The notes under the pieces are model-generated. The model did no database searches and had not been told where the DNA came from. It saw only the letters and a program-made list of their open reading frames with translations. A stretch of DNA of 56,707 bases, the filler included, from Dugesia japonica (taxonomy: Eukaryota): NCBI GenBank assembly GCA_001938525.1. It is 5 parts of 5 records of this genome, joined end to end, with 100 filler letters (N's around TTAATTAATTAA, not from the genome) between each part and the next. Parts side by side here need not be neighbours in the genome. Positions count along the whole stretch, not along the records: positions 35,717 to 45,897 come from MQRL01610749.1; 4 more parts are not named here. One strand, given 5' to 3'. Shown one piece after another: positions 9,243 to 40,295 of the stretch. Each line of letters starts with the position of its first letter. Within the stretch, counting starts at the first letter, position 1. The position numbers and the translations under genes are program-made.

Positions 9243-9600
9243 CACCCCTTTGGTTCGGGTTCGCCTTCCGTGACACTAGCTCGACTTACGAGACATACTT
9301 ATTATTATCTTATAAATTTCCAGTTTATGGAGCGTTTATTAATCTGGTTAATCTTAATTAATTATGATTTTAATAGTTATGAGATTAATTATCATAAAAA
9401 CCAAAGAATTTATAAGTGAAAAATATATTAGGGTTATTAAACTTCACTTATTACAAAGTAATCGTACAAATACAATAATCAATAGAACTAACATAATCCG
9501 AATCTCGATCCGGAGCAAGCATAGCACATGGACTGTCTCTTCTTCGGTAGCCATTAACGACTCTAGAGGTCCTCCATAATTTTCCATCTTCAAGTCAGAA
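9243..9600. repeat. Dispersed repeat (probably LTR-derived), with an inverted copy at ~35185-35530
   Basis: GATCCGGAGCAAGCA and AGAGGTCCTCCATAAT here correspond to TGCTTGCTCCGGATC and ATTATGGAGGACCT at ~35190-35270. Confidence 0.7.
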
Positions 9601-9775
9601 ATCGTTGCACCACGAATTTAAATAGAACAATTACAGTAATAATTGAGATTTTCTGGTTGACTTCAGTAATTTCAATTGACGAAGATTGACAATCTGGTTG
9701 ACTTCACTAATTTTTATTGACGAGGATTGATTTTTGATGAAAATTACATCGGTATTTATGTTAGATCCTAGTGGG

Positions 9776-35716: not shown

Positions 35717-36400
35717 TTATAACTTTTTAATAAATTAAAAAATTCTTCTTCGGTTGAACCTGGTTGTAAAAATCTTTGTATATTAGAAGAGATTTTATTA
35801 ATATATTGAATACTTACTTTACTTTACCAATTTACTTTACTTTACTTTACTTTATAATTATTACAAGTATATTCTTTTATTTTTATTTTTCAAAATTCAA
35901 AAAACCAACCGATAACCTAAGTAGATATAAAATGACGGTTTCCCGAGAAGTGTTTATTTTTTATTTACAATACACTATTTTTTTCCATGACAGATCGTGA
36001 GGTAAACGAAAGTATACAACTCAGAACGTCACAAATTATTTATTTCAATGAGATTTTTCACTTCTTGGGATTTATGAAATTAAGAATTGTCTACGATAAA
36101 AACAGTCTTAATATTTATATAAATTCAGTCTTGATATTTTTTTTCGGGTATTATCAATACTTTTGTTCGGGCAGTCTTTATGTGTATGTGTGTTGCATAC
36201 GTGTTGCATGGTTGATGTAATCATGCTGTAAAAGGCAGTTGTATTGCATTCAACCAATCATATCAACTAAAACAAATAGAAATTAATAGAAACTTACAAA
36301 TATCATTACAACAAGTATAAATTAATAGAAACTTACAAATATCATTACAAGTATATAAGCAAAGATTTTCGTAACACTAAACACTTTTAAATTTATAAAA

Positions 36401-36837
36401 ATGGTAGAAAATTTACTTACTAAAGATAATGTCTCATCAATTACCGTAGAACTCGGAAAAATTACTAATTTACATCATCACAAGATGTATTTTATCATGA
36501 ATCCGATTATTTATGACTTTAAAGTAATTTTATTTATTGTTTTTATTATAAATTATTAATTTTTCAGAAACCAGCTGTGATTAAAAAATTAAAATACAGT
36601 TTGCTTCTTTCCAATATCAACACGAAGGATAAAAACATGTTAAAAGCATTATTTACCAGATTCAGGAGAGATATAGAAATAAATGATTTGATTTTCATTA
36701 ATTTTAATGAGCAGGACGAAAATAAATATGATGATAAATCTGAATGGATAATACAAGTAGAAATAAAAGGTTACAACAAGTCCATAAATGCAACTGGTGT
36801 GATATGGAAGATCAAAAAGATTCAAAATAAGATCTAA
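36401..36837 (+). CDS. Two-exon, apparently intact 130-aa hypothetical protein (exons 36401-36523, 36568-36837); possible OB-fold ssDNA-binding protein of the Polinton
   Basis: ATG at 36401; a 44-nt GTAATT...TTTTCAG phase-0 intron joins exon 1 in frame to ORF 36577-36837; C-terminus WIIQVEIKGY..ATGVIWKIKKIQ. Confidence 0.6.
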
Positions 36838-37114
36838 TAATTATATAAACTTGTTGTTTTAAATTTTTTTTATTTAATAATAATTTTTTAGTGTTATTTT
36901 ATCATGTGTTATTTATTTTTAAGTAATTTTATTTTAAACGGTAAATTTTTTTTAAAATAAATTTTTCTTTAAAGTATTTTTTTTGTATGTAAGTAATTTA
37001 GATCAAAAAAAATTAATTTTATTAATCAATTAATGGTTTTTAAGAAGAAAAAAAATACATTTTTTGTAATCAATCAACGTTTATGGTCCTAAAGAGTGCC
37101 GGCTTTTTCGTTCA

Positions 37115-37585
37115 CAATTTAAAATTTTTTCTATCACTTTTTTNCCAATCAAATTTATTAAGTCTGATGGTCTGTTATCCACATCTTCTTGAAAATTCAA
37201 AATTTAAAGTTCAAGTATTACAATTTTTCCCGTTGAGAACACATTTACACATAAAGGATCGTATTTGAAAAGACGTAATTCTGAAAATAACTCCGATTCG
37301 AACCAACAGTTGACTTTTTTTTTCAATTTATATACATTTATTGCAAATCTCATATTTATGACAACTGTTAACGATCGTAGTCATATATTTTTAATATCAT
37401 AAGGGTTAAAATCTCGTGGTTCTAAAGGTTTCTTACACCCCATAATTCGACATTTTCTTGATCTGAAGAATATAATTGTATACTTGTCACTTTTGACTTT
37501 GAATTGACATGGTTTACCTATAGGAAAGCTCATTTTTTGTTACTTCTTTTGTCAAATCACCTCTGTAATTAATATTGGTGATCAT
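37115..37585 (-). pseudogene. Divergent TBP-like gene, copy B (near full length, frameshifts and stops)
   Basis: Reconstructed MITNINYRGDLTKEVTK/MSFPIGKPCQFKVKSDKYTIIFFRSRKCRIMG/KKPLEPRDFNPYDIKNI*LRSLTVVINMRFAINVYKLKKKVNCWFESELFSELRLFKYDPLCVNVFSTGKIVIL. Confidence 0.75.
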
Positions 37586-37708
37586 AATAATAATAATTAA
37601 TAAAATGAAATGAATTTCAGTGGGTGTATTGAGGATTTTCATGATTAATTTAATTGATTCGATAAAACAAATATAAATAATGTACTTATTATGAATAAAT
37701 AAAAAGAA

Positions 37709-38311
37709 ATGGAGAAGTTACGAAGGGATGCAGTTGTAGTGGGAAAACTTGTTTGCATGTAAATTACTGAAATCGAATGTATTCAAGTCGAAATTTAATA
37801 AAATATACTGGCATAGAGGTGCGGTAGTTGATTGGACTGACTTAATTAGAATTTCGTAACATCAAAATGAAGATTATAAACAGATTCGATAAAAATTGGA
37901 GCAAAAAATTGAGGCCTGGTGATGTTTTTTGTTGTTGAGGATCTGTATCAATAGGCAGATAAAGAAAAGGATTTCAATAACTTGTTCTCAAAGATGTCAA
38001 GACATTGTAATGTTACTATGATATTCATTACTCGAAACCTATTTCATCAAGGTGGTAGTCATAGAACACGTAATCTAAACGTACAATACTTGGTTCTATT
38101 TTAAAATCCTAGAGATCAAACAGTTGCTGATTTTCTATCAAGACAGGCTTATCCAAATAATAGGCATTTTCTTATTGAATCATTTGAAGATGCAACAGAT
38201 AAACCGCATGGATATCTATTTCTTGACTTTATACAGCAATGTCCAGATGAATATACAGTGAGAACAGATATTTTAAATCCTAATGGTATAACTATTTAAA
38301 ACAAACTAGGT
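37709..38311 (+). pseudogene. Polinton packaging ATPase (A32/FtsK-like)
   Basis: Walker A GCSCSGKT (37726), Walker B VVEDL, SKMSRHCNVTMIFITRNLF, LVLF*NPRD, DATDKPHGYLFLDF..RTDI. Confidence 0.85.
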
Positions 38312-38331
38312 AATTTTATTCATGTTATAAA

Positions 38332-39255
38332 ATGGGAAGATTTAGGAAATTTATAGTTGATCAACTAGCTGATGGTGATAATAAACAGCAAAAAATGTCT
38401 GTTAGTAAAATAATGAATGTGAAAAAAATTGCATTAGAAGTATTAGTTAAATTCAAAATCTCACAAGTCTCCATAAATATTTTATTGATTATTACAAGTC
38501 TTTTGTTAAAATGAAAAATGATGAAGTCAATTCAAAATATTCAAACAAATAATGTAAGAAATTTTAATAAAATATTTTTCAAAAATATTGATTTTTTAAA
38601 TTCCAAAATACTTTTATTTGACATGTATCTTTAATTATTTTTAAACCTAATTTTATAAAATAAGTTTTATAATTTTATTATTTAACATAATATAAAATAT
38701 CGACTTTAATTTTGACAAGTATATTTAATTATTTTTAAACATAAGTTTACAAAATAGTTTTTATAATTCCATAATTTTGCATAATATAATATATAGAATT
38801 TATTCAATTAAATTGTATTTTAAAAAAACATGTTTTATATTTTAAAAGTTTCAAAAAACAAATTTTAATATTATAAAAAAATTAAATATTTTCAAAATTA
38901 CGAAAATAAACTTAGGCGTAGATCAAAAAAGTTTTAAAAAAATGTTTCTTTTAAAAATTTTTATTAAAATAACAAAACTTTTTAAAAAAACGTTTTTTAT
39001 TTTTTCCAATTTTTCGAATTTATCTTTTTCAGGAATTGTGTTATATATTAATATTAATATTAATATTTTATTAATATTATATATAATTAATATTATATAT
39101 AAAAATTTAAAAATCTCAGATATTTGAAATTCATGAATTGACCTCACAAGAAGCCACTTGTAAATAATAAGAAGCAATTAAATATGTTTAAAAACCTTTC
39201 AAAATGGAACGACAAGAAACTACGAATGAAGAAAAGAAAATGGATATCAATATAA
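38332..39255 (+). pseudogene. Small basic Polinton-associated ORF split by a ~700-bp repeat insertion (38441-39147)
   Basis: MGRFRKFIVDQL...KKIALE before the repeat; KKPLVNNKKQ...KLRMKKRKWISI* after it. Confidence 0.4.
38441..39150. repeat. AT-rich dispersed repeat; Tc1-free paralogue of 25371-27220
   Basis: Collinear alignment of both ends. Confidence 0.8.
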
Positions 39256-39291
39256 ACAATTCACTCATAGGAAAGTATTACTGAAATAAAA

Positions 39292-39585
39292 ATGAAATTA
39301 CAACGAAGTATACCGTTTTTACTGCTTTGATTAAATGTCAAAATCTTCGAGAATGAAAACTTGCAATTATTTACACCTTATGTTATAAATGATTTACTTA
39401 GGATTATCATAATTATTGTTTGTGGTAATGTAGTATTGAGTAAAGCCAAAAAGGAAGTATTGAAAAAAATTAAAAAATTATTATTAACTCTTGTAAATAA
39501 TAAAAATAGAAAAATGATGAGACGAGTAATGACTAAACAAGGTGGTGGTTTTATAGCAGCAATAGGATTACCTCATTTCAAATAA
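39292..39585 (+). pseudogene. Conserved small Polinton protein (GNVxL...KQGGGF hydrophobic tail; core/membrane-active-like), copy 1
   Basis: INDLLRIIIIIVCGNVVLSKAKKEVLKKIKKLLLTLVN...MTKQGGGFIAAIGL. Confidence 0.65.
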
Positions 39586-39646
39586 ACAATGAGCGGATTG
39601 CAAACATTACCTAATTTTGAATTGAAATTTTCATCAAATTGTTGTA

Positions 39647-40295
39647 ATGGGAGCAAAAGTGAAAACAATAGGGATAGATACAAAAAACCCAGCAGGTTTC
39701 CGAGGTGTAGAAAAGTTAATGAAAGCAGCTCAAAAGTCAAGAAGATAGACGGAAAAAATGGTTATCAGGTTAGCTGACATACAGTCTGAACAATCTGATG
39801 TTTAAAAAATTTCCAACAAGAGCATATAAAACAAATGGTATTGGCGATTTTTGGCAAATGAATTTGATGGAAATGATTCCATATTCAAAAATTAATAAAG
39901 GTTACAAATATAGTCTAACATGTATTGATGTATTCAGCAGATTTGCACGAGCAATTCCAGTTAAATCGAAATCTGCTAATGATAGGGAGCCAGAAATCAA
40001 GACAATGTTCAAAGATGGACACCCAGATAATTTACAAACGTATTTGGGTAAAGAATTTTATAATTCTAAAGTGAAACAACTTATTAATTATCTAAAAATA
40101 AACCATTATAGTATATTCTTGCAAAATAAAGCTGTAGATGTAGAGAGATTTAATCGTACATTGAAAGATCCTTTGAAAAAGTACTTTGTACATGTTGGTA
40201 ATAAAACATGGACAAATGTTTTACCAAAACTTATTAAAAATCATTCCAGTCAAAAAGGTTTATAGGGCGAAAGACCTGTTGATGTAAGTTCAAAT
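39647..40295 (+). pseudogene. Polinton retroviral-like (rve) integrase, 3' truncated
   Basis: TKNPAGFRGVEKLMK..WLS, then KKFPTR..WQMNLMEM..GYKYSLTCIDVFSRFA..LQTYLGKEF..KAVDVERFNRTLK; catalytic Asp residues mutated. Confidence 0.9.

What the first reader, a model, noticed from the sequence alone, without database searches (positions are those of the whole stretch)
37115..38311. A miniature TBP-like gene sits head-to-head with the Polinton packaging ATPase: candidate Polinton lineage encoding its own basal transcription factor
Seen: a minus-strand, intronless ~150-codon frame-broken ORF (ATG at 37585) with two TBP-type repeats (TNIN...TIIFFRSRKCRIMG and FESELFSELRL..PLCVNVFSTGKIVIL). It starts only ~120 bp from the divergently oriented A32-like ATPase, in a run that continues to integrase and pPolB. 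The ORF track misses it. Established: core Polinton genes are pPolB, rve integrase, ATPase, protease and capsid proteins; TBP homologues are known from some large NCLDVs but, to my knowledge, are not a standard Polinton gene. Inference: repeat 1 is shortened (it seems to lack the C-terminal helix and the first intercalating Phe) while repeat 2 keeps both Phe positions. It could be a virus-specific promoter factor or a decoy for TFIIB/TAF partners.
Basis: partly seen in the sequence, partly recalled or inferred. Interest (0 to 1): 0.9.

Follow-up and report, generated by a model that had tools for sequence, protein, structure and literature searches.

The report
Decayed mini-TBP gene in Polinton remnant
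The window holds a dead copy of a roughly 150-residue TATA-binding-protein homologue that belongs to a lineage of Polinton-like virus elements, whose intact relatives put a fixed TATA-like motif in front of about half of their genes; the copy itself no longer works, and the gene family has been noted before but never studied.

Summary
On the minus strand at 37147-37585 lies a broken gene (1 frameshift, 2 in-frame stops). Its three reading-frame pieces match a family of ~145-175-aa proteins at 79.6, 41.2 and 11.7 bits; shuffled pieces reach 6.3 bits at most.

All 46 family members tested carry Pfam TBP. A natural member folds (pLDDT 96) into a TBP saddle (Foldseek TM 0.72 to solved TBPs). Its first repeat lacks the long C-terminal helix.

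The gene's start lies 123 bp from a divergent, decayed packaging ATPase. Downstream follow a truncated rve integrase and a pPolB fragment; capsid and protease genes are missing.

In each of the six distinct metagenomic contexts seen, the intact gene lies among Polinton genes. It is therefore an element gene, not a host pseudogene.

A new observation: in three such elements TATAAACA sits about 35 nt before the start codon in 24 of 52 upstream windows (0.5 expected). This suggests a paired factor and promoter.

Novelty is limited. IMG already names these proteins TBP, and Starrett et al. 2021 draw a TBP gene in MELD virus maps.

The host is unknown and may be an animal. I stopped fetching related DNA once that became apparent.

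The parts
37147..37585 (-). Mini-TBP pseudogene (one part). It has 1 frameshift and 2 in-frame stops. A single N sits just past its 3' edge and was left as it is.
   Evidence: ORF pieces; family profile 79.6/41.2/11.7 bits; Pfam TBP 22.3 bits; tblastn 40-45% identity to intact relatives.
37586..37708 (.). Divergent spacer of 123 bp between the two start codons. It holds a one-mismatch variant of the TATAAACA motif at 37672-37679 (+), 37 nt before the ATPase ATG.
   Evidence: Sequence; motif scan; spacing in relatives is 32-45 nt.
37709..38299 (+). Packaging ATPase pseudogene (A32/FtsK-HerA type). It has at least 2 frameshifts and 3-4 in-frame stops.
   Evidence: Three-frame translation; 61-64% identity to ATPases of L001 and L003, which carry faint Pox_A32 hits.
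39251..39258 (+). Exact TATAAACA site, 41 nt before the small gene below. The spacing is the same as in L003 (42 nt).
39292..39573 (+). Weak homologue of the ~103-aa gene that lies between ATPase and integrase in L003. It has 1 in-frame stop.
   Evidence: tblastn, 28% identity, E 4e-4.
39732..40304 (+). rve integrase pseudogene. Only residues ~30-233 of ~350 are present, with 2 in-frame stops; the C-terminal third is missing.
   Evidence: Pfam rve 27.4 bits; 48-58% identity to integrases of L001-L003.
40768..41403 (.). Near-identical direct repeats (74 nt at 100%, 217 nt at 98%) around a run of N. This is an assembly gap and was not filled.
41164..41789 (+). Fragment of protein-primed DNA polymerase B (residues 68-283 of a 1158-aa relative). 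It is spread over 3 frames with 2 in-frame stops; the rest is absent.
   Evidence: tblastn, 38.5% identity, E 3e-20; relatives of the query carry PF03175.

Best explanation
The locus is the decayed remnant of a Polinton-like element. Its lineage carries, as one of its own genes, a miniature TATA-binding protein of ~150 residues: a full second TBP repeat preceded by a reduced first repeat. Shown: the homology, the fold of a natural relative, the linkage to Polinton genes, and the decay of this copy. Inferred for intact relatives: the protein sits on DNA like TBP and keeps the acidic stirrup motif that in cellular TBP contacts TFIIB. It would nucleate host RNA polymerase II initiation at the element's own promoters. 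Those promoters are marked by an extended TATA box, TATAAACA, about 35 nt before the start codon of roughly half the genes, a geometry that leaves a very short leader. The off-consensus C lies in the 3' half of the box. In cellular TBP that half is read by the first repeat, which is the repeat remodelled here, so the protein and the motif may be a matched pair. At this locus nothing works: every recognisable gene is broken and the capsid module is gone.
For: Family and homology: 75 representative hits, mostly 140-175 aa. More than 140 clusters all carry PF00352, and 46 of 46 members hit Pfam TBP. The profile against PDB TBPs gives E 1.7e-22. Fold: pLDDT 96.2, pTM 0.86; the top 44 PDB matches are all TBP, with TMq up to 0.72 over ~170 columns. 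DNA-contact signature: F101, N115 and F117 are invariant and F41 is at 98%. E97 and E99 are nearly invariant and align with the E-P-E stretch of TBP. Linkage: the neighbours are ATPase, rve integrase, pPolB and Peptidase_C5. The window's ATPase, integrase and pPolB fragment are 38-64% identical to theirs. Promoter: TATAAACA is in 24 of 52 upstream windows, against a mean of 0.52 (max 4) in shuffles. Its reverse complement is in 1. Of 35 sites, 33 lie within 120 nt upstream of a gene on the same strand, and 24 of 31 TATAAA sites are followed by CA. The three elements are only 45-82% identical in protein.
Against: No binding or expression data exist. TATAAACA is close enough to a canonical TATA box that host TBP might serve it alone. 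The motif evidence rests on three contigs, two of them from one sample. In the window itself the motif count is not above chance. Only 14 columns of the first half align to the second half by profile comparison, so the homology of repeat 1 rests mainly on the predicted fold. The idea that the TBP gene has a different promoter is weak: one-mismatch variants sit at the usual distance in 2 of 3 elements. The host is unknown.
Confidence: 0.6

Rival explanations
1. The mini-TBP is a decoy. It would bind host partners such as TFIIB, Brf or regulators without productive promoter binding, and so shut down or redirect host transcription.
For: The TFIIB-type acidic stirrup motif is nearly invariant. The first repeat has lost the long helix that, in cellular TBP, carries regulator contacts (the regulator role is from established knowledge).
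Against: The Phe and Asn positions of the DNA-facing sheet are invariant, which a pure decoy would not need. The same elements carry a strongly conserved TATA-like motif.
Confidence: 0.2
2. It is a DNA-bending architectural protein that uses the TBP fold for replication or packaging of the linear genome, not for transcription.
For: It lies next to the packaging ATPase here and in L001, L003 and L004-L007. The TBP fold is used outside transcription in other protein families (established knowledge).
Against: Its position relative to the ATPase varies, and in L002 it is far downstream. The stirrup motif typical of TFIIB contact is retained. The motif that could be its target sits at promoter positions, not at contig ends.
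Confidence: 0.1
3. It is a processed or captured pseudogene of a host TBP or TRF that landed next to a Polinton by chance.
For: It is intronless and broken.
Against: Its closest relatives (40-56% identity) are mini-TBPs inside Polinton-like gene sets. Cellular TBPs are only 22-25% identical in the structural alignment. No cellular TBP reached E 1e-3 in the search of 1.84 billion proteins.
Confidence: 0.03
4. It is a chance reading frame in AT-rich DNA.
For: The region is ~25% G+C and full of short ORFs.
Against: The profile scores are 79.6 and 41.2 bits against 6.3 bits at most for shuffles.
Confidence: 0.01

Closest known systems
Cellular and archaeal TATA-binding protein (core domain, Pfam PF00352)
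   Same: The fold is the same two-lobed saddle. The second repeat is complete, with both Phe positions and the acidic stirrup motif.
   Different: The mini-TBP has about 150 residues against about 180. Its first repeat has four strands and a 4-residue helix and lacks the long C-terminal helix. Pfam recognises only the second half. Identity is only 22-25%. It is encoded by a mobile virus-like element.
TBP gene drawn in MELD virus maps by Starrett et al. 2021 (PMC8502044, Fig. 5 legend; bioRxiv 10.1101/697771, Figs 5-6 legends)
   Same: Both are mid-size linear dsDNA elements with adintovirus-like PolB and integrase, carrying TBP together with TRAF/MATH-type genes. L001 also has two MATH/TRAF genes.
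   Different: The paper gives only a legend entry ('similar to TATA binding proteins'), with no architecture, family or promoter analysis. Whether it is the same family could not be checked, because the figure and supplements are not held.
TBP-like proteins of giant viruses (Nucleocytoviricota), as returned from BFVD
   Same: These are virus-encoded TBP-fold proteins (Heterosigma akashiwo virus, Terrestrivirus, Ectocarpus virus, ChoanoV1 and others; probability 1.0).
   Different: They are 186-500+ residues long and only 9-19% identical. They act with virus-encoded RNA polymerases in cytoplasmic factories (established knowledge). No RNA polymerase gene was annotated in any of the element gene tables seen.
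Animal TBP-related factor TRF2/TLF (recalled from knowledge; it did not come back as a named hit)
   Same: It is a TBP paralogue that directs a specialised promoter set.
   Different: TRF2/TLF is full length and is known for having lost the TATA-contacting Phe residues, whereas the mini-TBP keeps them. No sequence comparison was made.

Membership tests
TBP (PF00352) | Sequence match to the Pfam model above the gathering score | tested here: met
   All 46 natural relatives match, best E 1.2e-24. The window's longest piece alone scores 22.3 bits against a cut-off of 22.9, but 79.6 bits on the family profile.
TBP (PF00352) | Two tandem repeats forming one saddle | tested here: met
   AlphaFold2 model of P0009, pLDDT 96.2. 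Foldseek aligns ~170 columns to whole TBP cores, with TMq up to 0.72.
TBP (PF00352) | Each repeat has the full strand-helix-four strands-helix layout | tested here: not met
   Repeat 1 has four strands and a 4-residue helix and no C-terminal helix; repeat 2 is complete. The N-half and C-half profiles align over 14 columns only.
TBP (PF00352) | A pair of DNA-kinking Phe residues in each repeat | tested here: inconclusive
   Repeat 2: F101 and F117 are invariant. Repeat 1: F41 is at 98%. The other position is not resolved; there is an aromatic share of 0.70 at position 21 and no conserved aromatic between positions 22 and 40.
TBP (PF00352) | Binds a TATA box and recruits TFIIB | not testable with these tools
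   Only indirect evidence: the stirrup residues E97 and E99 are nearly invariant, and there is a TATA-like motif upstream of element genes.
Polinton/Maverick-type element | Protein-primed family B DNA polymerase | tested here: met
   A fragment only, at 41164-41789; relatives of the query carry PF03175.
Polinton/Maverick-type element | Retrovirus-like rve integrase | tested here: met
   Pfam rve 27.4 bits (below the 32.6 cut-off, on a truncated ORF). It is 48-58% identical to rve integrases of L001-L003.
Polinton/Maverick-type element | A32/FtsK-HerA-type packaging ATPase | tested here: met
   61-64% identity to ATPases of L001 and L003, which carry faint Pox_A32 hits. Pfam on the window's short pieces found nothing.
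Polinton/Maverick-type element | Capsid genes and adenain-like protease | tested here: not met
   tblastn with the ~410-aa protein, the protease and the other genes of L001-L003 found nothing in the piece. The module is absent or unrecognisable here.
Polinton/Maverick-type element | Terminal inverted repeats and a target-site duplication | tested here: inconclusive
   Only short AT-rich inverted repeats were found. The element is truncated and the piece ends at 45897.

The most novel reading that the evidence does not exclude
A small nuclear dsDNA virus-like element carries a self-contained promoter system. An asymmetric mini-TBP, whose remodelled first repeat reads the off-consensus 3' half of an element-specific TATA box (TATAAACA), would let the element claim host RNA polymerase II for its own genes independently of host TBP and its regulators.
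Probability: 0.3. Interest if true: 0.7.

Novelty: new variant of a known kind. Interest (0 to 1): 0.5.

Why it matters
Virus-encoded TBPs are known from giant viruses, which bring their own RNA polymerase. A TBP in a 15-20 kb Polinton-like element, in which no polymerase gene was annotated, would be a minimal way of redirecting the host's basal machinery. The naturally shortened, asymmetric TBP paired with a fixed eight-base promoter motif offers a simple natural case for asking how each TBP repeat reads its half of the TATA box. For genome annotation, the family is a useful extra marker of this Polinton lineage. The copy in this window is only a fossil.

Tried and rejected
- Direct searches with the window's pieces gave nothing useful. 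PDB sequence searches returned only chance bHLH hits at E 0.5-0.8, and PHROGs returned nothing.
- The two top-ranked long hits of the representative search, P0001 and P0016, are low-complexity artefacts.
- The 1158-aa protein of L003 had no PDB sequence match and only an Endonuclease VII hit in Pfam. Its identity as pPolB came from its relatives.
- The RT-like snippet at 44916-45077 gave only E 0.9 to the Ty3 reverse transcriptase and no Pfam hit, so a retroelement there is not established.
- The 'cascade' idea, in which the TBP gene lacks the motif, was weakened by one-mismatch variants upstream of 2 of 3 TBP genes.
- A literature hit for the octamer in Entamoeba promoters (PMC1874630) is probably coincidence.
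- The phylogeny against host TBP/TRF and dN/dS among copies were not done. No named cellular comparators or other copies from this genome were on hand.

Full report
**What is in the window**

The piece (35717-45897) is about 25% G+C and has no ORF longer than 155 codons. The longest piece scores 22.3 bits on Pfam TBP, against a cut-off of 22.9 (E 1.2e-4).

Against a profile built from 46 natural relatives, the three pieces score 79.6, 41.2 and 11.7 bits. They cover profile positions 5-137 of 166. Two hundred shuffles of each piece reach at most 6.3 bits. Compared with intact relatives, the gene has one frameshift and two in-frame stops. By eye, the six residues that are invariant in the family are all still present in the window's frames.

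**The family**

A search of 1.84 billion representative proteins with the 57-residue piece found 75 hits. Most are 140-175 aa, with the match in their C-terminal half. A profile search then found more than 140 clusters, all with a precomputed PF00352 hit. Many are named 'TATA-box binding protein' by IMG. Almost all sources are metagenomes (ENA, JGI, Logan, a soil catalogue); one sits on a 3.8-kb contig binned as Bacteroidota.

- All 46 aligned members hit Pfam TBP, but in the member whose table was shown only the C-terminal half is matched.
- The family profile finds solved TBPs at E 1.7e-22 to 6.5e-15. Here too only its second half matches, and it aligns to both TBP repeats.
- An AlphaFold2 model of the natural member P0009 is confident (pLDDT 96.2, pTM 0.86). 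Repeat 1 has four strands and a 4-residue helix. Repeat 2 has the full layout ending in a 20-residue helix.
- Foldseek's top 44 PDB matches are all TBP, with TMq up to 0.72 over about 170 columns and 22-25% identity.
- Against viral models, only giant-virus TBPs match, at 9-19% identity.
- F101, N115 and F117 are invariant. F41 is at 98%, and E97 and E99 are nearly invariant.

Whether the first Phe of repeat 1 is lost is not resolved.

**It is an element gene**

Look-ups of five family members returned six distinct contexts. In each, the gene lies among Polinton-type genes:

- a ~208-aa ATPase with faint Pox_A32 hits (one of the two contigs listed without DNA has only an unannotated 222-aa gene at that place)
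- an rve integrase, sometimes with a chromodomain
- a ~405-430-aa protein
- Peptidase_C5 in L002
- pPolB (PF03175) in L004-L006

Orientation relative to the ATPase varies. The gene is upstream on the same strand in L001 and L003. It is divergent, with a Bcl-2 gene between, in L004-L007. It is far downstream in L002.

The window's other genes are relatives of those in L001-L003:

| Window gene | Coordinates | Identity to L001-L003 |
|---|---|---|
| ATPase | 37709-38299 | 61-64% |
| Integrase | 39732-40304 | 48-58% |
| pPolB fragment | 41164-41789 | 38.5% |

The pPolB fragment matches the 1158-aa protein of L003, whose relatives carry PF03175 plus an Endonuclease VII insert.

All of them are broken:

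- ATPase: at least 2 frameshifts and 3-4 stops.
- Integrase: 2 stops, and only about residues 30-233 of ~350 are present.
- pPolB: about a fifth of the protein, spread over three frames with 2 stops.

No capsid or protease gene was found, and no terminal repeats. A host-derived processed pseudogene is excluded. The closest relatives are element-borne (40-56% identity), and no cellular TBP reached significance.

**A promoter motif in intact relatives**

In L001-L003 the octamer TATAAACA is in 24 of 52 upstream 60-nt windows. Dinucleotide-preserving shuffles give a mean of 0.52 and a maximum of 4. Its reverse complement is in one window. Of 35 sites, 33 lie within 120 nt upstream of a called gene on the same strand, mostly 32-45 nt before the start codon. 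Of 31 TATAAA sites in these windows, 24 are followed by CA. No further flanking position is conserved.

The three elements are only 45-82% identical in protein, so the motif is maintained rather than merely inherited. Genes with the motif include the ATPase, pPolB, the ~410-aa protein, the protease and the MATH genes. The TBP genes have no exact site, but one-mismatch variants sit at the usual distance in two of three elements.

In the window, a one-mismatch site lies 37 nt before the ATPase ATG, and an exact site lies 41 nt before the small-gene homologue at 39292. The overall counts in the window are not above chance.

**Mechanism**

Shown: a TBP-fold protein with conserved DNA-facing Phe and Asn positions and a conserved acidic stirrup motif. 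It is encoded by elements whose genes carry a fixed TATA-like box at TATA-to-start geometry.

Inferred:

- The protein binds that box and recruits host TFIIB and RNA polymerase II.
- The remodelled first repeat, which in cellular TBP reads the 3' half of the box (established knowledge from TBP-DNA crystal structures), accounts for the invariant off-consensus C.
- Loss of the first-repeat helix may free it from host TBP regulators.

Rivals are a decoy for TFIIB or other partners, and an architectural role in replication or packaging.

**Comparison and novelty**

Virus-encoded TBPs are known from giant viruses. Starrett et al. [quoted passage not shown] L001 likewise carries MATH/TRAF genes. I found no paper that analyses such a gene. 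The family is therefore a little-noticed variant of a known kind. The motif pairing appears to be a new observation.

The host is unknown. Several things hint at animals:

- the Bcl-2 gene in L004-L007
- the statement that adintoviruses carry Bcl2 homologues
- the named distant pPolB relatives (28-35% identity), which are all from insects, an oyster and a spider

Starrett et al. nevertheless place their TBP-bearing maps under non-animal datasets.

Because I could not tell, I made no further look-up, pattern scan or locus fetch. I never read the DNA of L004-L007; only their gene tables were used. I used L001-L003 only for scores, counts, outer bounds and the short motif. The N runs were left as they are.

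2. In my reasoning I also sketched recurrent residues of the family, and I noted where the frames change while reading the translation. Neither was carried into notes, scripts or this report.
3. The look-ups may in hindsight have fetched contigs of viruses of animals. I stopped once the hint appeared, and nothing was deleted.

Noticed in passing
L001, L002, L003 (whole loci); window 37672-37679 and 39251-39258: TATAAACA lies about 32-45 nt before the start codon of about half the genes of the TBP-bearing elements. It is in 24 of 52 upstream windows against 0.5 expected, and is strongly strand-specific.
   Followed up: yes
L004-L007 gene tables (9398-9775); L001 854-1858 and 5476-6447: Related elements carry a Bcl-2 family gene between the ATPase and TBP genes, and L001 carries two MATH/TRAF-type genes. 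These are host-interaction genes and may hint at an animal host.
   Followed up: no
window 40768-41403: Two near-identical direct repeats (74 nt at 100%, 217 nt at 98%) flank a run of N between the integrase and the pPolB fragment. This is probably an assembly-gap duplication.
   Followed up: no
window 41800-45897, minus strand: The stretch is A-rich on the minus strand and has a reverse-transcriptase-like snippet at 44916-45077. Support is weak (Ty3 RT E 0.9, no Pfam hit). It may be a decayed retroelement that cuts off the Polinton remnant.
   Followed up: partly
window 38617-38802: A tandem pair of 92-nt units (84% identical) lies in the 15-20% G+C spacer between the ATPase and the integrase.
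   Followed up: no
L003 2839-6315 and relatives: The pPolB of this lineage carries an inserted Endonuclease VII (HNH-type) domain. Many relatives lack a Pfam pPolB hit although they are clearly homologous.
   Followed up: partly
P0196: A mini-TBP sits on a 3.8-kb contig deposited as part of a 'Bacteroidota bacterium' MAG. This is probably a binning error.
   Followed up: no
PMC1874630: Entamoeba histolytica promoters have a described motif that contains TATAAACATC. This is possibly coincidence, and only a faint lead to an amoebozoan host.
   Followed up: no
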